Both the position numbers and the translations under genes were made by a program. The notes beneath the pieces were generated by a model that was given only the letters and a program-made list of their open reading frames with translations, did no database searches and was not told the DNA's origin. DNA of 56,316 bases from Octopus bimaculoides (Eukaryota), in the NCBI RefSeq assembly GCF_001194135.2, contig NC_068983.1, positions 165,971,878 to 166,028,193 on the forward strand, given 5' to 3'. Within the stretch, counting starts at the first letter, position 1. Each line of letters opens with the position of its first letter. Of this stretch, positions 11,099 to 49,857 are shown one piece after another.

Positions 11099-12670
11099 GT
11101 GAGTATCTTTATATTTTTATTGGTTTTCTTAATCATCTCTATTGAAGTTATTATTTTTTAATTAATGCTTTAATAGACTGATGCATAAAAACTTGTCCGA
11201 CATCTCTTGTGTTTAGTTGATGTCCCTAAACTTTCTCATTTTGACAGAACATTTTTAATGGCTAAATCAGGGGAGATAATCGGTGCCCAGTGACCCTTTT
11301 CAGGGATTCTAAGACCTTTGGGTGAAAATGGAAGAAGGTGGAGACCCCACCCAAATACTTGGAACAGATTAGACTCCACTAAAGACATTCAAGGGTCAGA
11401 TGGTGATGGTTTAACCGTGCCATCCAAGAATACGAACATTCCCAAATTTCTTTTATTAGTCACTGGTTAATGCCAAAGAAGACACCTTTCGAGTTTTATC
11501 AACATTAAATAAAAAAAAAAAAGAAAAACGATATTACAATCTGCATTTCATTTAGTTTGTTGTAATCTATGACTAAAGAATCACCAAATTAAAGAAACTA
11601 TGAGTTTGTATTATGTAACCTTACTATCTGACTCGTCATCATCATTTAACGTCCTTTTCCCATGCTGGCATGGGTTGGACGGTTTGACAGAAGCTGATAA
11701 GGCTGGGAGCTGTCCAGGCTCCATTCTCTATTCCGGCAGGGTTTCTATGGTTGGATGCCCCTTCTAATGCCAACCACTTTACAGAGTGGATTGGGTGCTT
11801 TTTATGTGGGACCAGCTCTTGGTCTTTTACATGATGCTGGCATGAGTGTTTTATTTGTGGCACCGTCTTTTATATTTTATTGCGCACATCATCATCATCA
11901 TCATACATCTGTTTTCCATGCTGGCATGGGTTGGACAGTTTGACAGAATCCAGTGTACTCCAGGGCTTCTCTCCCTTTAACCACAAAACAGGATAGCACT
12001 TGAAAACTGAATTAGTGTTTGCTGTTATGTTGTCCCTAGTTACAAAAAAAAAAAAAAACTACTTTTGTGTTAATTTAGAAACAGTAANNNNNNNNNNCCA
12101 GTTGATTACAATGTTTGAATTTTCATTCAATGAATTTTTTTTTTTTTTTTTTTTTTTTTCAAACCATTTAGTAATCCTTATTCCTCTCTCAACCCCTTTA
12201 CTTAGCTTTTGTGGACTTGGGGAAAGCCTTTGACAGGGTCCCCCGATCCCTTATCTGGTGGGCGATCTTCCGTTCTGGGTTGAATGGTTTAACGGGCTGG
12301 CAAGCCAAAGGATTGCACCAAGCTCAACTGTCTGTTTTTATGGTTGATTCCTTCCTAACAACAAACTACTTTGGACTTGGTGCTTTTTATGTGGCACCAG
12401 CAATGGCAAGGTCTGTCTTGGCATAGTTTTTACAGCTGGATGCCCTTCCTAATGCCACCCACCCCACAGAGTGGACTGGAAACTGAAAGCTTCCATAGGT
12501 TGTTACAGTTTTTCTCTCTCCTGAGATTTTATATTATTTTCCATTGAAGTGTCAGATGATAACCAGAATCCTCATTAAACAAAACTGGGTTCCATGAAAC
12601 CATTTCCAAATGGTAATTCTTCAGAAATTCTTATTTAGTTTTCATGATTAGTTTTTCTTTGTTTTCTTAG

Positions 12671-26200: not shown

Positions 26201-26947
26201 GTAACTATTGTTTCTTCTTTCATAATTTTTACCATTAATAATTCTATATGAACATAATTATATTTTGTAAGATTCTTTTTCTAGTTTATCAAGAAGTTGA
26301 TTCTGTTTTCTAGATTTTCTTCTTGAATCCAGAATGGTCTTAGTTACAAGCCCCATGACTAAGTTTATAAGGTATCCGTCCTCTTTCTGATCAATCAAGA
26401 ATTCAAACCAGCAATGGGTTCCTTGGTATTTCTGGCAGGAACACTTTATTTCCCATTGTCTTACTTCATCTATTTGTCAGGAATAGTTCCCAGATTTATC
26501 ATGGAATGTTATTGTGATAGACTGGAATGCTATCCAGGGGCAGATTTATCTCTCATTTTCTTCTTGCCATAAAATTAGAGCTGAACCTCAATCCTTGCAA
26601 ACTGTTCAGCTTGTCAAGGGCTCTTCCATTCCCCTTTTACAAAATTTAATCCTTTTCTGTCAAGTAGCTCAGTTTTTGTATTTCTCATCTTTTAGAATCA
26701 TTTCCACTCTCTCTCTCCTCTTTTACTCAAATTTCTCTAATTTCTTTTTAGATTTTTATCTCTTATTTTCCATTTTTCTATTTTTCCAGTTTTTTGGATT
26801 CTTCTGTTTCTAATGTTCTAAATTTATTTTTGTCCTTTATGTTCATTTCTGCTTTTTTATGTCTATCTATTCATTCCAGCAGATTCAAATGTAATCCTAT
26901 TGTTTACCCTCAGAAAACACTGCCTCCCATTGTCTCCTTACGCTGGG

Positions 26948-27307
26948 GAATCTTGTGTGTTATGAACACACATCATACAAAGGGAGGAGATGTTCTGATG
27001 GCGAAAACCAACATTAATCAGATATTCATGTTTGAATTTTTACCAGGATGTTCTAAGAATGAATAGAAACATCATTGTTTGGATTCTCACTGTTCTGTGT
27101 GTACCCCATGAATTATTATGTTTGGCAGAGATCAACAAATAATTTGTTTGCTGAATTCTATGAACAAGACCTTGTCCTTTTGTGTTAGATTCATTTGCCT
27201 GGGAGGATAACTTTGACTGAGGAGACGTACAATAAGGTTGAAACACTAGGGAATTGCATGTTATTTAAAGAGAAGAAATGTTCTCTGATGACAAAAATCA
27301 ACATTAA
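26948..27307 (+). ncRNA. Second retrozyme-like copy (hammerhead 3' half deleted)
   Basis: actttga-CTGAGGA-gac-gtacaataag-gtt-GAAA-cac at 27210-27246; aligns with the reverse complement of 49130-49450; terminal repeats 290 nt apart. Confidence 0.65.
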
Positions 27308-27765: not shown

Positions 27766-29008
27766 GATGCCTAATGGAAGGTATTTGTTTGAATTGGCCA
27801 GGATGTGTTAAGAATAAGTTGATACATCATTGTTTGGATTCTTACTGTATCAGGTGCACCTCATGAATTATCAGGTATTAACTTATAATGTATAATGATA
27901 ATCTACTTGCTGTGATATGTGTTTTAGTGTTAAGCTTTCAGCAAACTTGATAATCGATCAGAATCAAAGACCTGGCCAAAACCTCATGAAACAGGGTCCT
28001 GAATGTCTTAACGTTCCTTAAAAATAGTTTTTCTAAAATTATACAAAACAAATAAAATGTGTACAAAATGGTGAAACACCAGCTTCTGGGTGTGGGTGAC
28101 ACCTCACTGCTAGCCTTTCATGGAATCTCTTCTTGCTTGCAGTTATTATTTAACCCCAGGTCAGTTTACTTCCTTCTCTACTTAACTGCGGTATGGGTAT
28201 TAATGTTTTTTTTTTGACACTTTTACTTGTTTCAGTCACTGGTATGTGACCATACTGGAGCACCACCTTGTAGGATTTAGTCAAACAAATTGACCTTGCT
28301 ACTTCCTTTTTTAAATCAAGTATTTTAGTTTGTCAATCTCTTTTGCCAAGCCATTAGGTTAAGAAGATGTAAACAAACCAATGTTGGTTTGTTTACATCT
28401 AAAGTGGTAAGGGGACTAGGACAATCTCTCTCTCTCTCTCTCTGTCACATATGCATGTCTCACAGTTTCTGTCTACCAAATTCACTGATAAAGCACTGGT
28501 TGACCCTGAGCTCTAAAAAATACTTCTCTATGGTGCAGTGGGACTGAACCAAAACCATCTGGATATAAAGTAAGCCTCTTAACCACACAGCCATGGCCCT
28601 GCCTCCGCTATTGAAATTCTCGTCATATCCAGGGCAGATATTTATATCTTATCTCTTCAATTCCTCAGAAATTGAACTTTAGCATGCTAATTATTGGTCT
28701 TTCTCGTTATAGATAAACTTTTAATTAAACAGCTTTGATGTGAGTAAACAACAGCACAAACAGGACAGGGAAACAAATTATTCTTTTATTAATTAAAGAG
28801 GAAGTGAATAATTTTTGAATTTGAAACAATTAATTGGTGCATGCATGGCTGTGTAGTTAAGCAGTTTGCTTTCCAACCATATGGTTTAAGGTTCAGTCCT
28901 ACTGTGTGGCACCTTGGGCTAGTCTTCTGCTGTACCCCTGGGCTGACGAAGCCTTGTCAATAGATTTGGTAGACAGAAACTGAAAGGAGCCTGTTATGTG
29001 TGTATGAA

Positions 29009-33075: not shown

Positions 33076-33360
33076 AATTTGTTGTCACCAAACCTCAAGA
33101 TAAAATGCCTGCTAACTAAATGATCGTGTAATAGGTAATAATAACAAAAATGCAAATTATTTCAAGTGTAGGTACGAGACTGAAATTTGGTGGAAGGGTT
33201 CTTAAAATAGAAATATTTGAGACTTTGATCTTCTGATTCATTTGTATGACTTATCACCTGTTAATCATCTGGAGTTAATTNNNNNNNNNNNNNNNNNTGT
33301 TCACTGACTAATCAATAAAAGGTTTAATATTTATTTATTCAATCTTTTCTTCTTTTGCAG

Positions 33361-34892: not shown

Positions 34893-34946
34893 NNNNNNNN
34901 NNNNNNNNNNNNNNNNNNNNNNNNNNNNNNNNNNNNNNNNNNGAGA

Positions 34947-38549: not shown

Positions 38550-39134
38550 CTAGGTTTTCCAATTTTGAAGTAAAAATTTCTGAAAATGTGGCCAACTCCC
38601 CACAGCTTCCAGCCTGGTGTTCAGGTCGCCTCCTCCTGGCTCATGTGAGTTCATGAGGATTATATATCTTTCTGCCATACACAATTTACACAGTCTTGTT
38701 CCATTGTGATAGAGTCCACAAGCTTCCAGTAATTTCCACCTGATGCTAAAGGGGATATGATCGTCCTTTAGGCACCATACGTATGCTGTCAGTGTCATTG
38801 TGTTGTGTCTCTGCAGGACCCTGAAAGAAGACCTGTGGTTGTTCAGGCGAATTTTAAATTTAGATTCACAAAATCTGACATAAATTTTAATGTGTGTCCC
38901 TGTGTTGGCATTGATGTTACTGATATTTGTGCTGCTTCTATTTGAGGCTACATTTGCTTGGGACACTGTAGCCTTGGTGTTACATCGGATATCCACTGGG
39001 CATTCATTTCTAATCCTGCATGAACAACCTGCCTCTGCCTGTGGTTCAGGAGTGCTAAGTAATGTTTTCTTAACATTGGCTGCACAACTGAAAGAGATTC
39101 TTAAATTATGTCTGTTAAAGATCTTTCTATATTC
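38550..39134 (-). mobile_element. Penelope-like element: Cys-rich linker and GIY-YIG endonuclease
   Basis: Open frame KIFNRHNLRISFSC...CSCRIRNECP...KIYVRFCESKFKIRLNNHRSSF...IRWKLL...CKLCMAERYII...LNTRLE..SWPHFQKFLL*, the PLE endonuclease C-terminus pattern. Confidence 0.85.
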
Positions 39135-43705: not shown

Positions 43706-46619
43706 CATTGTGGTTGCATGCATAAAATGCATTCCCCTAATCATTCTCCCTGTCCATCCTTCATCTTCACCCACATTTCACCACTTCCACCCCTCACCTC
43801 CCAAATTCTCTCTCCTTCTCCACCACCATACACCTGTTCCTCCCACACTCATGCAACACCTACACACCCAAACGCCCCTTTTTTCCTATCCACACTTCCT
43901 TCTCACATCATACCTTCAGCCCTGACAATCACCCAAACCCCTCATCACCAATATTTTTATCTCTTCCCAGTTCTGCCCCTATCACTCTCACCTTTTCTTT
44001 CAAAATTTAAGTGTCATGTAGATCTTCTGCAGCAAAAAAAACCTGTTCTGCTCTGGCCCCTTCCTTCATTTCCTTGCATAAAGCCCCTCCCCTCATTGCT
44101 TTGCATAAAGCCCCTCCCCTCGTCAAGGTATGTGTAGCTAAGGAGCACTCAGCCACTTGCACGTTAATTTCATGGATNNNNNNNNNNNNNNNNNNNNNNN
44201 NNNNNNNNNNNNNNNNNNNNNNNNNNNNNNNNNNNNNNNNNNNNNNNNNNNNNNNNNNNNNNNNNNNNNNNNNNNNNNNNNNNNNNNNNNNNNNNNNNNN
44301 NNNNNNNNNNNNNNNNNNNNNNNNNNNNNNNNNNNNNNNNNNNNNNNNNNNNNNNNNNNNNNNNNNNNNNNNNNNNNNNNNNNNNNNNNNNNNNNNNNNN
44401 NNNNNNNNNNNNNNNNNNNNNNNNNNNNNNNNNNNNNNNNNNNNNNNNNNNNNNNNNNNNNNNNNNNNNNNNNNNNNNNNNNNNNNNNNNNNNNNNNNNN
44501 NNNNNNNNNNNNNNNNNNNNNNNNNNNNNNNNNNNNNNNNNNNNNNNNNNNNNNNNNNNNNNNNNNNNNNNNNNNNNNNNNNNNNNNNNNNNNNNNNNNN
44601 NNNNNNNNNNNNNNNNNNNNNNNNNNNNNNNNNNNNNNNNNNNNNNNNNNNNNNNNNNNNNNNNNNNNNNNNNNNNNNNNNNNNNNNNNNNNNNNNNNNN
44701 NNNNNNNNNNNNNNNNNNNNNNNNNNNNNNNNNNNNNNNNNNNNNNNNNNNNNNNNNNNNNNNNNNNNNNNNNNNNNNNNNNNNNNNNNNNNNNNNNNNN
44801 NNNNNNNNNNNNNNNNNNNNNNNNNNNNNNNNNNNNNNNNNNNNNNNNNNNNNNNNNNNNNNNNNNNNNNNNNNNNNNNNNNNNNNNNNNNNNNNNNNNN
44901 NNNNNNNNNNNNNNNNNNNNNNNNNNNNNNNNNNNNNNNNNNNNNNNNNNNNNNNNNNNNNNNNNNNNNNNNNNNNNNNNNNNNNNNNNNNNNNNNNNNN
45001 NNNNNNNNNNNNNNNNNNNNNNNNNNNNNNNNNNNNNNNNNNNNNNNNNNNNNNNNNNNNNNNNNNNNNNNNNNNNNNNNNNNNNNNNNNNNNNNNNNNN
45101 NNNNNNNCATTCATGCCAGCATGGATGACAGATGTTAAATGATGATGATGATGATGATGATGTCACATTAGACATCAGGAAGCTAAAAATACTGTGACAC
45201 TCACCACCATCATTATTCAATATCCCTTTTTCCATGCTGGCATGGGTTGGATGAATTAAAAGCAACCAACGCGCCAATGGAGGAATAGGAGAGAGAAGAG
45301 TGTGACAGGTGATTTGAAATGGGGATTGAGGGGTTGAAGAAGAAACTAGGAGTGAGTCTGGAAGGAGGTGATAAGGAACAGTAATAGGGGAAACCTTGTG
45401 AAATGTAGGGGTGGAAATAAGGGGTATTGTTATAGCAGCTGAATGAGTTTGGGAGTGGATGTTATGAATTTGATTGGAAGACTAGATATTTAATTTAAAA
45501 TTTCAAAAAGCAAGTTCAAATTTTTTTAACGTAGCAATTAAACTTTTGTTAGAGAATTATATCATGCACTAATTTATCTAATTATGGTCTTTAAATATTA
45601 TTTTACTTATAAATTAATTAGGAAGAGCATGAGGGACGTCATTGCTTGCAATTTAACGAACCTTGTGTTACATTATTAAGTCTTGGTGTATCTCATTGTA
45701 ACAGTATTAAATAAAAATAGCCATCTTTATATCATAATGTATATACACCATAATGTATATATACCACCTATGTATCATAATTTAGTGTATATATGCACCG
45801 TTGAAAGAGAGGATGTTGTGGTTCTTTTGTCTGAGATCAGTTCCAAGAAGGCCAAAAAGTGTCTGATGCTCTCACGAGTCATTGCTGAGACAATATTTGC
45901 CTTGCTCTAATATTGTTTTTTACTTGACATATCCCTGTAAAGATTTTCTTTCAGACAAAAACCACAGCGCCATTGCCTCTCGATGTTGTATCTATTAATA
46001 TGGTTCCCAGTTGGCCATTTTATTATCAAGTCTGTTCTATAAAAATGTATTTCCTCACCAGATTATCTGAATGTTCACTGATCTTTTGCTGAATCTGTTG
46101 CACTTTCTTACAATTTCTTTTCTTACTAACAGAAATGTAATGAAAGTGTTTTTACATTTTAAATGTTTTTTGCCTCTGAATCTTGATGGGTTGGTGGTTT
46201 CTTCAAATCTATAAATCAACAAAAGGTTGTTGGAGCCTGTATCTTGACTGTTGGATTCTAATTACTTTATGAAGCAATGGAAATATATGATATCTGGATA
46301 ATCTATAAAACTAGAGAAATCAATTTTGTTTAGGCAAAGATCTTGACAATTCTAGTTTTCTGAAGTTTTTAATCTTACTTAATGATTCTTGATTTAATTT
46401 GGATTAATTGACTTGTCTTATGGAATTCTTTGTTTCAGTTCTAAACATTAATTCTACACTCACACGCACACACTTACTTTTCTGAATTGACTCTTTTTCG
46501 GCAACCAGTAAATAGTTAATAACTAGTAGTCATAGTAACCATTAAAAAAAAACATGTATTGAGAAACAGTTTGTGTTAACTGGAGCAGATGGGTTCAGTT
46601 CATCCCTGTGTGTGTGTGG

Positions 46620-48078: not shown

Positions 48079-48692
48079 ATGTAAAGTGTAGATATTGATG
48101 AGTTAATAACAAACAATCATAAAATATAATTGATACATAAATCTCTCCACACTGCATAACTATTACATTAATCTATTTATTAAAAACTGTTCAGCTGCTC
48201 TATAACTATAAATAGTTCAACTGTTATCATTAAGTCTCTCTCTCTGTCTTCAGCTACCAGGCACCAGTGCCATCATTGCCATTACAACAACAAACACCAG
48301 AAAACATCTGATCCTTAAACAGTGTCACCAATCAATCATCCAAGATTGGTAGTTTTGTTGTTTTTTTTGGTCTAGAAAGGTTGGAAGGCAAAATGAACCT
48401 TGGCAGAATTTGAACTCAAAGCTCGGAAACTCAGAACAAATACTGTGAAGCAATCCAATGACTCTGACAATTAATTACTTTTATTACAATTATCAATATC
48501 TGATTTGTGATAGAAGCTATTGAAAATATAATGGATTAATGATAACAGTTGAACTATCCAGAGTTATAGAGTAGCTAAACGGTTTTTAATAAATAGAGTA
48601 AATGTAATAGTTAACCAGTATAGAGAGATTTATGTATCCGTTATATTTTATGATTGTTTTGTTATTAACTCATCAATATCTACACTTTACAT
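48079..48692. repeat. Inverted repeat (~155-bp arms) flanked by a 29-bp direct repeat
   Basis: 48079-48233 is the near-exact reverse complement of 48536-48692; 48050-48078 matches 48693-48721 at 27/29. Confidence 0.85.
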
Positions 48693-49112
48693 AGTATCAA
48701 TATTATCATATTGTAAAGAATGTCTTCATCTATGGCTGCTGTCAAGTGAAGATGAAAATGGATTTTAGTTATCCTGAAAACAATTACCCCAGTATTAGTA
48801 TTATTATTTCCATTTTTAGTGTCAATGCATTTTTATCTTTAATTTTGACAATCATCATCATCATCATCATCGTTTAACGTCCGCTTTCCATGCTAGCATG
48901 GGTTGGACGATTTGACTGAGGACTGGTGAAACCGGATGGCAACACCAGGCTCCAGTCTGATTTGGCAGAGTTTCTACAGCTGGATGCCCTTCCTAACGCC
49001 AACCACTATTAATAATAATAATAATAAAAACTGAAATTATATAATTTTTTATAATAACATACCTATTTATTCTCATAATATTCTGGTCAACTCAAGTGTG
49101 AATATGTTGATG

Positions 49113-49470
49113 GTTGTTGTTTTTTGTTGTCAGAGAATGTCTCTTCTCTTTAAATGATGTGTATTCATAACACATGTGATTTATCAATGTTAGGGGACTT
49201 TCAGACACTGTCGTGTTTCAACCTTATTGTGTGTCTCCTCAGTCTAAACTATACCTCCAGACCAATGAATCTACCAACCTCTTGTTTATAGAAATCAGCA
49301 GCCAAATTATCTGCTGATGTCTGCCAACAGGTAATAATTGATGGGGTACACACAGAACAGGGAGAATCCAAACAATAACATATCTATTCATTCTTAGTAC
49401 ATACTGGCAAATTCAAACCTGAATATCTGATTGTTGTTGTTTTTTCATCAGAGCATCATCTCCCTTAATT
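49113..49470 (-). ncRNA. Retrozyme-like element (~318-nt unit) with a type I hammerhead ribozyme at 49197-49248
   Basis: Minus strand gtttaga-CTGAGGA-gac-acacaataag-gtt-GAAA-cac-gaca-gtg-TC-tgaaagt; ~40-nt terminal direct repeats 318 nt apart. Confidence 0.72.
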
Positions 49471-49684
49471 TATTTTTTCAATTCCACTGAAGTAAAATTT
49501 ATCCAGGTAAAAATTGGGGACAATAATCCCTCATTAAACCTGGTTTAAATTTTATTTATCTTTTACTACTTTTAACAGTTTATGATATTTAGTCACAAAC
49601 AAGATCTGCAATCCTCTTGGAGATTCTTTCCCTTTTTTTGTTGATGAAAGTTTCAATGCCTTTTTTCTTTGGAATTCCTTTTAG

Positions 49685-49857
49685 ATTGTATTCTCTACGA
49701 AATATCAAGACAGTGTTCAAGAAGCATACCTTCATGTGCTCCAAGAAGCCAACCTGATTCTGAGGGGTCCAGTCGTAGACTCTGAGATCGAATATTTAGA
49801 AGAATATCAAAATTTATTTGCCGAATCCTGCCAGAAACTCGGAGATTTCTATGCCTG
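49685..49857 (+). CDS. HPS3: HPS3 exon 8
   Basis: IVFSTKYQDSVQEAYLHVLQEANLILRG...FAESCQKLGDFYA (cf. HLLSEAHLLVRA...FKESCGHLGDCYS); ttttag| and |gtagtt; phase 0-2. Confidence 0.92.

What the first reader, a model, noticed from the sequence alone, without database searches (positions are those of the whole stretch)
49113..49470. Retrozyme-like element with an intact type I hammerhead core, antisense in an HPS3 intron
Seen: the minus strand of 49197-49248 reads gtttaga CUGAGGA gac[acacaauaag]guu GAAA cac[gaca]gug UC|ugaaagu. This gives a complete CUGANGA core, a 3-bp stem II, GAAA, a perfect stem III hairpin ending in a GUC cleavage triplet, and a partly paired stem I. It sits in a non-coding unit whose ~40-nt ends are direct repeats 318 nt apart (cagag at 49131 and 49449), i.e. 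one monomer plus a partial repeat. Known: metazoan non-LTR retrozymes are ~170-400 nt type I hammerhead repeats that yield circular RNAs and are thought to be mobilised by Penelope-like elements; a PLE endonuclease fragment is present at 38550-39134. Inference: this is a cephalopod retrozyme family. I cannot tell whether it is already described.
Basis: partly seen in the sequence, partly recalled or inferred. Interest (0 to 1): 0.85.

Follow-up and report, generated by a model that had tools for sequence, protein, structure and literature searches.

The report
Decayed hammerhead-ribozyme repeat in HPS3 intron
This is a worn-out copy of a ~320-base non-coding tandem repeat whose family consensus carries a well-formed self-cleaving hammerhead ribozyme, so it adds a new lineage-restricted family to the already known animal "retrozyme" elements, but this copy is a neutral relic with no sign of circular RNA.

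Summary
The motif is real. It sits in a ~425-nt AT-rich non-coding element (about 49050-49475) made of 1.3 copies of a ~320-nt unit, antisense in an intron of a confirmed HPS3 gene.

It is a repeat family, not a chance motif. A second array lies at 26790-27303 and 27787-27871. Genomic contigs of the same species hold about 60 copy-equivalents of the hammerhead block and about 225 of a neighbouring block. Other copies are tandem, with periods of about 290-330 nt.

The family majority repairs this copy's defects, giving a canonical type I hammerhead: helix I of 7 bp, a UA bulge and 4 bp; a G10.1-C11.1 pair; helix III kept while its loop varies.

The window copy has four stem-weakening substitutions. 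Its ortholog in a sister species drifts at the flank rate. RNA coverage is at intron level, with no cleavage-site pile-up and no circle-specific joint. Rfam models do not detect it, and the hammerhead fold is not the minimum-energy fold even for the consensus.

Verdict: a new member of a known kind (non-LTR retrozyme or PLE-associated hammerhead repeat). Activity, circular RNA and mobilisation by Penelope-like elements (PLEs) are not shown.

The parts
49050..49475 (-). Copy A of the repeat family: about 1.3 tandem units, non-coding, 34% GC. The boundaries are approximate.
   Evidence: Self-BLAST and alignment with copy B; GC content; no ORF longer than 50 aa.
49131..49450 (-).
   Evidence: Direct-repeat spacing of 318-321 nt. 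Other loci show go-back joints that sum to 320 nt, e.g. 49444 -> 16 nt -> 49141.
49374..49456 (-). Upstream arm of the direct repeat, i.e. the start of unit 1.
   Evidence: 86-nt match at 76% identity to 49053-49138, E = 3e-11.
49053..49138 (-). Downstream arm of the direct repeat, i.e. the start of the truncated unit 2.
   Evidence: the 18-nt core 49108-49125 is 94% identical to 49428-49445.
49193..49258 (-). Type I hammerhead motif including the distal helix I (GGAGG...CCCC). The core and helix III are intact; helices I and II are weakened.
   Evidence: Sequence; descriptor scan; family majority variants at 49202, 49245, 49248 and 49220 restore pairing.
49236..49242 (-). CUGAGGA core box (C3-A9, with N7 = G).
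   Evidence: the identical box is present in copy B at 27217-27223.
49216..49219 (-). GAAA core box (G12-A15.1).
49204..49215 (-). Helix III hairpin CAC-GACA-GUG followed by U16.1-C17. The predicted cleavage is 3' of C49204.
   Evidence: In about 40 other contigs the CAC/GUG stem is kept while the loop varies (UGUG, CACG, UGCA).
26790..27303 (+). Copy B: a tandem array of at least 2 units of the same family. One hammerhead at 27210-27246 has an intact core but helix III and the cleavage site are deleted. An older remnant lies at about 26905-26940, roughly 305 nt upstream.
   Evidence: 80% identity over 268 nt; alignments; coordinates.
27787..27871 (+). Continuation of array B after a ~480-nt foreign insertion at an (AAT)n run.
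   Evidence: 79% identity to unit positions 49418-49334; sequence.
49684..49856 (+). Context: the downstream HPS3 exon, which fixes the host gene's strand.
   Evidence: RNA contigs splice 49856 -> 49980 with GT..AG; Pfam HPS3_C, E = 1.1e-15.

Best explanation
The element at about 49050-49475 (minus strand) is an old, decaying insertion of a ~320-nt non-coding, AT-rich, tandem-forming retroelement family of the non-LTR retrozyme / PLE-associated kind.

Inferred life cycle of the family's founders (from the known families, not shown here): they were transcribed as multimers. The type I hammerhead in each unit cut after GUC, releasing ~320-nt monomers with 5'-OH and 2',3'-cyclic phosphate ends. 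These could be ligated into circles. A reverse transcriptase supplied in trans, presumably from a Penelope-like element, copied them by rolling circle into partial or multiple tandem units inserted at AT-rich or microsatellite sites.

Shown here: the family exists; it is tandem; its majority sequence folds into a canonical type I hammerhead; and this copy has lost helix I and helix II pairing, has only one cleavage site, drifts neutrally, and is seen in RNA only at intron-background level.

This locus therefore does nothing today beyond being intronic filler antisense to HPS3.
For: 1. Family. A second array lies in the window. Genomic contigs of organism A at >=80% likeness give about 2,600 k-mer depth over the hammerhead block against about 40 for single-copy sequence, i.e. 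about 60 copy-equivalents. The 49366-49397 block reaches about 9,500, i.e. about 225.

2. Tandem organisation. Copy A is 1.3 units. Copy B is at least 2 units, with two hammerhead remnants about 305 nt apart. Contigs from other loci go back with periods of 291-330 nt, e.g. 49444 + 16 nt -> 49141 = 320, seen in both DNA and RNA.

3. The consensus repairs the ribozyme. Majority states, on the minus strand:
- C at 49202 (87%), pairing with G2.2
- U at 49245 (77%), pairing with A1.3
- C at 49248 (66%), pairing with G1.6
- C at 49220 (47-53%), giving the canonical G10.1-C11.1 pair
Copy B independently carries ACUUUGA as its helix I 5' strand.

4. Loose-end consensus sequences from two different anchors agree. 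They read ...GGUGGGGUAACUUUGA-CUGAGGA... and GAAACAC-N4-GUGUC-UCAAAGUCCCCUUAC in about 40 contigs. Helix III is kept while its tetraloop varies: UGUG, CACG, UGCA, GACA.

5. Retrozyme-like composition: 34-36% GC, no ORF over 50 aa.

6. Relic status. The hammerhead fold of copy A scores +4.3 kcal/mol. The ortholog in organism D is 93-94% identical overall and has 3 changes in the 53-nt ribozyme, one of which breaks helix III.
Against: - No Rfam hammerhead model matches this copy, even at E<=10.
- Even for the family consensus, the hammerhead fold (-15.0 kcal/mol) loses to a competing GGAGACAC/GUGUCUC helix (MFE -18.8). Helices II and III have about zero ensemble probability.
- Helix II is only 3 bp, capped by a 10-nt loop.
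- RNA evidence is weak: 21-34 family reads per ~12 million raw reads, no read-end pile-up at the GUC site, and no joint absent from DNA.
- The monomer is not rod-like (z = -0.72).
- Other blocks of the unit are as conserved as the ribozyme block or more abundant.
- The consensus was inferred from variant tables and loose-end consensus sequences of short unitigs, not from aligned full copies. Linked covariation between the two strands of a helix could therefore not be tested, and variants lying near unitig ends are under-reported.
- No autonomous PLE with a matching terminal region was identified.
Confidence: 0.7

Rival explanations
1. This is an ordinary interspersed or tandem repeat that merely contains a hammerhead-like string. 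No member ever self-cleaved, and the conserved 30-nt block is kept for another reason or simply by recent common ancestry.
For: - Rfam models are silent.
- The hammerhead fold is not the MFE, even in the consensus.
- Helix II is weak.
- Descriptor hits arise by chance at 0.135 per 56-kb window, which means thousands genome-wide.
- There is no RNA evidence of cleavage or circles.
- Neighbouring blocks at 49286-49317 and 49350-49413 are equally or more abundant.
Against: - At all four stem positions where copy A differs from the family majority, the majority base restores a Watson-Crick pair with an unchanged partner. The chance of this is roughly 0.375^4, about 0.02.
- Helix III is preserved while its loop varies among about 40 contigs.
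- A distal 4-bp GGGG/CCCC extension with a 2-nt bulge, typical of type I helix I, appears in the consensus.
- The ~320-nt AT-rich tandem organisation matches the known hammerhead-bearing repeats (PMC7229834).
Confidence: 0.13
2. The unit is not a free-standing retrozyme. It is either the terminal pseudo-LTR of an autonomous Penelope-like element, or a Sm-alpha-like SINE carrying a hammerhead, and copies A and B are solo or partial-tandem remnants of it.
For: - PLE insertions typically form partial tandems and favour microsatellites (PMC8557442). Copy A ends next to an (ATT)n/(TAA)n run, and copy B is interrupted at (AAT)n.
- Retrozymes and PLE pseudo-LTRs are reported to be phylogenetically intermingled (Li et al. 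2026, bioRxiv 10.64898/2026.07.22.740005).
- The 49334-49445 module occurs on its own in many more loci and inside mRNA-sized contigs, so the unit is modular.
Against: - No reverse-transcriptase ORF adjoins either copy.
- The only nuclease-like ORF in the window is 10 kb away, and no reverse-transcriptase family matched the 22 relatives scanned.
- PLE hammerheads are usually minimal, lacking helix III (PMC6155905). This one has a 4-bp helix III with a tetraloop and an extended, bulged helix I.
- Arrays of 1.3 to at least 2 short units fit the retrozyme description.
Confidence: 0.15

Closest known systems
Metazoan non-LTR retrozymes (Cervera & de la Pena 2020, NAR; PMC7229834), e.g. the Mytilus galloprovincialis 350-390-bp repeats
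   Same: - A type I hammerhead inside short (150-450 bp), AT-rich, non-coding tandem repeats, from dimers to multimers.
- No LTR, PBS or PPT.
- Species-specific sequence.
- A mollusc host has been reported.
- Unit length of ~320 nt, against averages of 313-342 bp in insects and corals (Li et al. 2026).
[quoted passage not shown]
   Different: - No abundant linear or circular RNA in the available RNA-seq.
- Modest copy number (tens to a few hundred, against thousands in mussel or axolotl).
- An old family, with copies about 20% apart.
- The monomer of this copy is not highly self-paired.
- N7 = G, a 3-bp helix II with a conserved 10-nt loop, and a competing helix.
- Not detected by Rfam models.
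Hammerheads in the pseudo-LTRs of Penelope-like elements (Cervera & de la Pena 2014; reviewed in PMC6155905, PMC8557442)
   Same: - Type I topology.
- Located in partial-tandem terminal repeats.
- Insertions near microsatellites.
- PLEs are reported in cephalopod genomes (PMC8557442, PMC6962438).
   Different: - PLE motifs are minimal, with little or no helix III and no loop-loop contacts, and act as dimers. This one has a stable helix III and a long bulged helix I.
- No RT-EN ORF is attached.
Sm-alpha of Schistosoma mansoni and newt satellite 2 (classical type I hammerhead repeats, ~330 nt)
   Same: - A unit of about 330 nt.
- A type I hammerhead with a bulged helix I.
- Dispersed and tandem genomic copies.
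- From memory, not tested: the UA bulge in helix I and the A/U-rich loop 2 (..CAAUAA..) resemble the Schistosoma bulge and loop 2 pair.
   Different: - Helix II here is 3 bp, against 4 bp there.
- The loop is longer and the core has G7.
- No sequence homology was tested, and no Rfam Hammerhead_1 hit was found.
Rfam Hammerhead_1 (RF00163); 235 hits were reported in the giant squid genome (PMC6962438)
   Same: The same ribozyme class and topology.
   Different: This copy does not reach even E<=10 against any Rfam hammerhead model. The family would therefore be missed by standard Rfam annotation, at least for decayed copies.

Membership tests
Non-LTR retrozyme | Type I hammerhead with the conserved core (CUGANGA, GAAA, UH cleavage triplet) and three helices | tested here: met
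   The core and helix III are intact in copy A. The family majority restores helix I (7 bp + UA bulge + 4 bp) and the G10.1-C11.1 pair. Caveat: this copy's own helices I and II are defective.
Non-LTR retrozyme | Ribozyme embedded in short tandem repeats (about 150-450 bp; dimers to multimers) | tested here: met
   The unit is about 320 nt. Copy A is 1.3 units. Copy B is at least 2 units with two hammerhead remnants about 305 nt apart. Go-back joints with periods of 291-330 nt occur in other loci.
Non-LTR retrozyme | Low GC (<45-50%), non-coding, no LTR/PBS/PPT | tested here: met
   GC is 34-36% and the longest ORF is 50 aa. PBS and PPT were not searched for specifically.
Non-LTR retrozyme | Transcribed and processed into abundant linear and circular monomer RNAs | tested here: not met
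   There were 21-34 family reads per ~12 million raw RNA reads, with no joints and no end pile-up. Contig depth over the hammerhead block is 5-40, against 25 for the HPS3 exon. The only go-back joints also exist in DNA. The library types are unknown, so circles could have been excluded by poly(A) selection.
Non-LTR retrozyme | Self-cleavage at the predicted site | not testable with these tools
   This needs in vitro transcription or end-specific RNA sequencing.
Non-LTR retrozyme | Highly self-paired monomer RNA | tested here: not met
   The 320-nt unit of copy A has an MFE of -74.4 against a shuffle mean of -70.4, z = -0.72. This was tested only on the decayed copy, folded as a linear molecule.
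Non-LTR retrozyme | Co-occurrence with autonomous Penelope-like elements | tested here: inconclusive
   The literature reports PLEs in cephalopods. In the window there is only a GIY-YIG-like ORF remnant, and no reverse-transcriptase family matched the 22 relatives scanned.
PLE pseudo-LTR minimal hammerhead | Minimal motif lacking a stable helix III, flanking an RT-EN ORF | tested here: not met
   Helix III is 4 bp plus a tetraloop. No RT ORF lies near either copy.
Rfam Hammerhead_1 / HH9 / HH10 / II / 3 | Score at or above the family gathering threshold | tested here: not met
   There were no hits at the gathering threshold, nor at E<=10 on 1.2 kb or on 111 nt. The family consensus itself could not be submitted to the tool.

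The most novel reading that the evidence does not exclude
An octopod-lineage retrozyme family could carry an atypical type I hammerhead: G at N7, a 3-bp helix II capped by a conserved 10-nt loop, and a built-in competing GGAGACAC/GUGUCUC helix acting as a cleavage/ligation switch. Such a motif escapes Rfam models. Younger members more than 20% different from this copy might still be active and yield ~320-nt circular RNAs in tissues or library types not sampled here.
Probability: 0.1. Interest if true: 0.5.

Novelty: new member of a known kind. Interest (0 to 1): 0.3.

Why it matters
Hammerhead-bearing tandem retroelements are already known from cnidarians to amphibians, including a bivalve mollusc. 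A family in this lineage extends the catalogue rather than the concept.

Its practical value is threefold:
- It shows that standard Rfam annotation misses such families once copies decay or when helix II and loop 2 are unusual.
- It gives a concrete consensus ribozyme that can be tested in vitro.
- It offers a dated relic, because the insertion is shared by two species. That could help time retrozyme/PLE activity in this lineage.

For the HPS3 gene itself there is no indication of any effect.

Tried and rejected
- Rfam scans: the whole window at the gathering threshold, 1.2 kb at E<=10 and 111 nt at E<=10. No hammerhead hit. The other weak hits (SNORA63, MIR1520 and others) are far below their thresholds and were ignored.
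- Tandem Repeats Finder did not report the 320-nt period, because there are too few and too diverged copies.
- Raw RNA reads of three 2026 runs: too few family reads to map ends or joints.
- Using 'goes back' joints as evidence for circles: rejected. The same joints are present in DNA contigs and do not lie at the cleavage site.
- Fishing for full family copies through predicted proteins of Logan contigs, using the 50-aa ORF of the unit: no candidate.
- Fold statistics of the monomer and of the 70-nt ribozyme: not better than shuffles.
- Confirming the 'PLE endonuclease': Pfam gave no hit for the window ORF and the word-index search gave one unannotated Logan protein. The exhaustive search gave 2,487 relatives, mostly 110-320 aa among the 150 listed. 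Of 22 scanned, 4 had weak GIY-YIG matches and none matched a reverse-transcriptase family. The ORF is GIY-YIG-like, but PLE membership is unproven.
- Two other species from one of the RNA studies (organisms B and C): no match at >=80%.
- 'No variants in the core' as proof of selection: I first read this way. I now discount it, because variants near the ends of short unitigs are not listed. For example, the known A/B difference in loop 2 is not reported in either.

Full report
**1. What is in the sequence**

On the minus strand, 49249-49197 reads GTTTAGA-CTGAGGA-GAC-ACACAATAAG-GTT-GAAA-CAC-GACA-GTG-TC-TGAAAGT. This has the order of a type I hammerhead:
- helix I 5' strand
- CUGANGA box
- helix II hairpin
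- GAAA
- helix III hairpin closed by A15.1-U16.1
- C17, then helix I 3' strand

Otherwise the description is accurate. All 11 invariant core nucleotides are present, and helix III (A-U, C-G, A-U, C-G with a GACA loop) is sound.

The other two helices are weak. Helix I has G.G and A.A mismatches at positions 1.2/2.2 and 1.3/2.3, directly next to the core. Helix II is only three pairs, starts with G10.1.U11.1 and is capped by a 10-nt loop.

A simple descriptor finds this as the only such site on either strand of the window. Shuffled windows give 0.135 hits, or 0.01 when at least 5 of 7 helix I pairs are required. The motif alone would therefore be unremarkable on a genome scale.

No Rfam hammerhead model reports it, either at the gathering threshold or at E<=10 on stretches of 1.2 kb and 111 nt.

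**2. Context**

The flanking exon 49684-49856 is spliced to 49980 across a GT..AG intron in RNA contigs. Its translation matches Pfam HPS3_C with E = 1.1e-15.

The element spans about 49050-49475. It is 34% GC and has no ORF above 50 aa. Its two ends are direct repeats of 86 nt (76% identity, E = 3e-11), 318-321 nt apart. That amounts to 1.3 copies of a ~320-nt unit with a single hammerhead.

A very abundant SINE-like repeat (48835-49022) and a (TAA)n run adjoin its downstream end.

**3. It is a repeat family, and the family is tandem**

The window holds a second member on the + strand:
- 26932-27246 is 80% identical over 268 nt.
- The array continues upstream to about 26790 as a more decayed unit.
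- It continues downstream at 27787-27871, after a ~480-nt foreign insertion at an (AAT)n run.

This array has two hammerhead remnants about 305 nt apart. One, at 27210-27246, has an intact core but a 41-nt deletion that removes helix III and the cleavage site. An older one lies at about 26905-26940.

Laying genomic contigs of the same organism on the element at >=80% likeness gives k-mer depths far above the single-copy level of about 40:
- about 2,600 over the hammerhead block, i.e. about 60 copy-equivalents
- about 9,500 over 49366-49397, i.e. about 225 copy-equivalents

The unit is therefore modular, and the hammerhead module is its rarer part.

Contigs from other loci 'go back' with periods that sum to 291-330 nt. 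An example is 49444 + 16 nt -> 49141 = 320. These joints occur in DNA and in RNA, and in organism A as well as a sister species. Tandem organisation is thus a family property.

**4. The family majority encodes a better ribozyme than this copy**

At four stem positions the majority of family contigs differ from copy A, and each majority base restores a pair with an unchanged partner. On the minus strand:

| Position | Copy A -> majority | Share | Pair restored |
|---|---|---|---|
| 49202 | G -> C | 87% | C1.2-G2.2 |
| 49245 | A -> U | 77% | U2.3-A1.3 |
| 49248 | U -> C | 66% | C2.6-G1.6 |
| 49220 | U -> C | 47-53% | canonical G10.1-C11.1 |

Copy B independently carries the majority helix I strand ACUUUGA.

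Loose-end consensus sequences obtained from two different anchors (copy A; copy B) agree. Upstream they read ...GGUGGGGUAACUUUGA-CUGAGGA. Downstream they read GAAACAC-N4-GUG-UC-UCAAAGUCCCCUUAC, in about 40 contigs.

The implied consensus hammerhead has:
- a helix I of 7 bp, a 2-nt UA bulge and a distal GGGG/CCCC stem
- a helix II of GAC/GUC
- a helix III of (A)CAC/GUG(U), whose tetraloop varies (UGUG, CACG, UGCA, GACA) while the stem is kept

Restoration of pairing in the consensus, and loop variation over a constant stem, are what descent from a functional ribozyme predicts. A chance string would not be expected to show them.

**5. Cautions**

- The contigs are short de Bruijn unitigs. The two strands of a helix could not be linked within single copies, so true covariation was not tested.
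- The apparent absence of variants in the core is partly an artefact of how variants near unitig ends are listed. The known A/B difference in loop 2 is not listed in either direction.
- Thermodynamically, the hammerhead fold of the consensus (-15.0 kcal/mol) is beaten by a competing helix between GGAGACAC (core and helix II 5' strand) and GUGUCUC (helix III 3' strand and cleavage site). The MFE is -18.8, and helices II and III have about zero ensemble probability. Natural hammerheads often have such alternatives and rely on tertiary contacts that these energy models ignore, but this leaves room for doubt.
- For copy A itself the hammerhead fold scores +4.3 kcal/mol against an MFE of -12.1. This copy is almost certainly inactive.

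**6. This locus is a neutral relic**

RNA contigs of a related species (organism D) contain the orthologous stretch 49125-49434 at 93-94% identity. There are three changes within the 53-nt ribozyme (5.7%), one of which breaks a helix III pair. That is the same rate as the flanks. The insertion therefore predates the split of the two species and is not under selection. Two further species from one of the studies show no match at >=80%, so the family, at this level of similarity, is lineage-restricted.

**7. RNA evidence**

- Across four older RNA runs, the locus is covered by low-depth contigs (about 3-5) that are continuous with the intron, against about 25 for the exon.
- At 80% likeness, the hammerhead module reaches depth 5-40.
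- In three deeply sequenced 2026 runs, only 21-34 of about 12 million sampled reads hit the family. There were no joints and no pile-up of ends at the GUC site.
- The go-back joints seen in RNA are also present in DNA and lie away from the cleavage site, so they reflect genomic tandems and not circles.
- The 320-nt unit of copy A is not unusually self-paired (z = -0.72).

The hallmark of retrozymes, abundant monomeric linear and circular RNA, is therefore not seen. The library types are unknown, however, and poly(A) selection would hide circles.

**8. The Penelope link**

The ORF at 38550-38996 (minus strand) has no Pfam hit and a single unannotated close relative. An exhaustive search finds 2,487 relatives, mostly 110-320 aa among the 150 listed. 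Their consensus is ...VVYQATV...YIGLTE..FK.RY.NH..SF...C.LC..EK...LNKR.EL...CRH..KFLL. Of 22 scanned, four match Pfam GIY-YIG weakly and none matches a reverse-transcriptase family. It is a GIY-YIG-like nuclease remnant. Calling it a PLE endonuclease is not supported by these data, and no RT ORF lies beside it. That PLEs exist in cephalopod genomes rests on the literature (PMC8557442, PMC6962438).

**9. Comparison with what is known**

The anatomy matches the non-LTR retrozymes of Cervera & de la Pena 2020: type I hammerheads in AT-rich, non-coding tandem repeats of 150-450 bp, from dimers to multimers, including 350-390-bp repeats in a mussel (PMC7229834). It also matches Li et al. 2026 (bioRxiv 10.64898/2026.07.22.740005), who find that monomers and short arrays are common, that about 43% of Xenopus copies are intronic, and that retrozymes are related to PLE pseudo-LTRs.

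It differs from PLE hammerheads, which are minimal and lack helix III (PMC6155905).

I found no paper describing a hammerhead repeat or retrozyme in octopus or any other cephalopod. The nearest is a count of 235 Rfam Hammerhead_1 hits in the giant squid genome (PMC6962438).

The membership features stand as follows:
- Met: ribozyme, tandem short unit, and composition / non-coding nature.
- Not met in the available data: RNA abundance and circles; self-paired monomer.
- Untestable here: self-cleavage.
- Inconclusive: PLE partnership.

**10. Verdict**

The locus is a decayed, single-ribozyme, 1.3-unit relic of a lineage-restricted, hammerhead-bearing tandem retroelement family. It is a new member of a known kind and of modest interest. 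Activity, circular RNA and the mobilising element remain to be shown.

Noticed in passing
window 26790-27303 and 27787-27871 (+): A second, longer array of the same family, with at least 2 units. It has two hammerhead remnants about 305 nt apart and is split by a ~480-nt foreign insertion at an (AAT)n run.
   Followed up: yes
window 49334-49445: This module of the unit is about 4 times more abundant in genomic contigs than the hammerhead module. It also occurs inside abundant 1.4-2.5-kb RNA contigs (depth 100-240), so it is shared with other, expressed loci or elements.
   Followed up: partly
window 48835-49022: A SINE-like repeat directly downstream of the element, flanked by (ATC)7 and (TAA)6 runs. 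RNA contig depths reach about 9e5, and thousands of diverged contigs were laid on it.
   Followed up: no
window 48643, 48645, 48650: Three clustered A>G differences in the RNA contigs laid here: 48645 and 48650 in two runs, 48643 in one. They lie on the host-gene sense strand, within or just beside the right arm of the 14-nt inverted repeat 48523-48536 / 48636-48649. This may be A-to-I editing or a polymorphism.
   Followed up: no
window 38550-38996 (-): A GIY-YIG-like nuclease ORF remnant that belongs to a very large family: 2,487 relatives at E<=1e-3, mostly 110-320 aa among the 150 listed, with a conserved CxLCxxEK...CRHxxKFLL tail. No reverse-transcriptase family matched the 22 relatives scanned, so it is not demonstrably a Penelope-like element.
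   Followed up: partly
window 49204-49238 (-), and the family consensus: GGAGACAC (core and helix II strand) is complementary to GUGUCUC (helix III strand and cleavage site). This competing helix wins the MFE fold. It could be a cleavage/ligation switch, or an argument against ribozyme function.
   Followed up: partly
window 49283-49329: A 19-nt imperfect inverted repeat (hairpin) inside the unit coincides with a second conserved, high-depth block of the family (49286-49317).
   Followed up: no
window 12088-12097, 14997-15006, 16728-17568, 21321-21683, 33281-33297, 34893-34942, 44178-45107: Assembly gaps (runs of N, 2,221 bases in total). Further family copies in the window could be hidden in them.
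   Followed up: no
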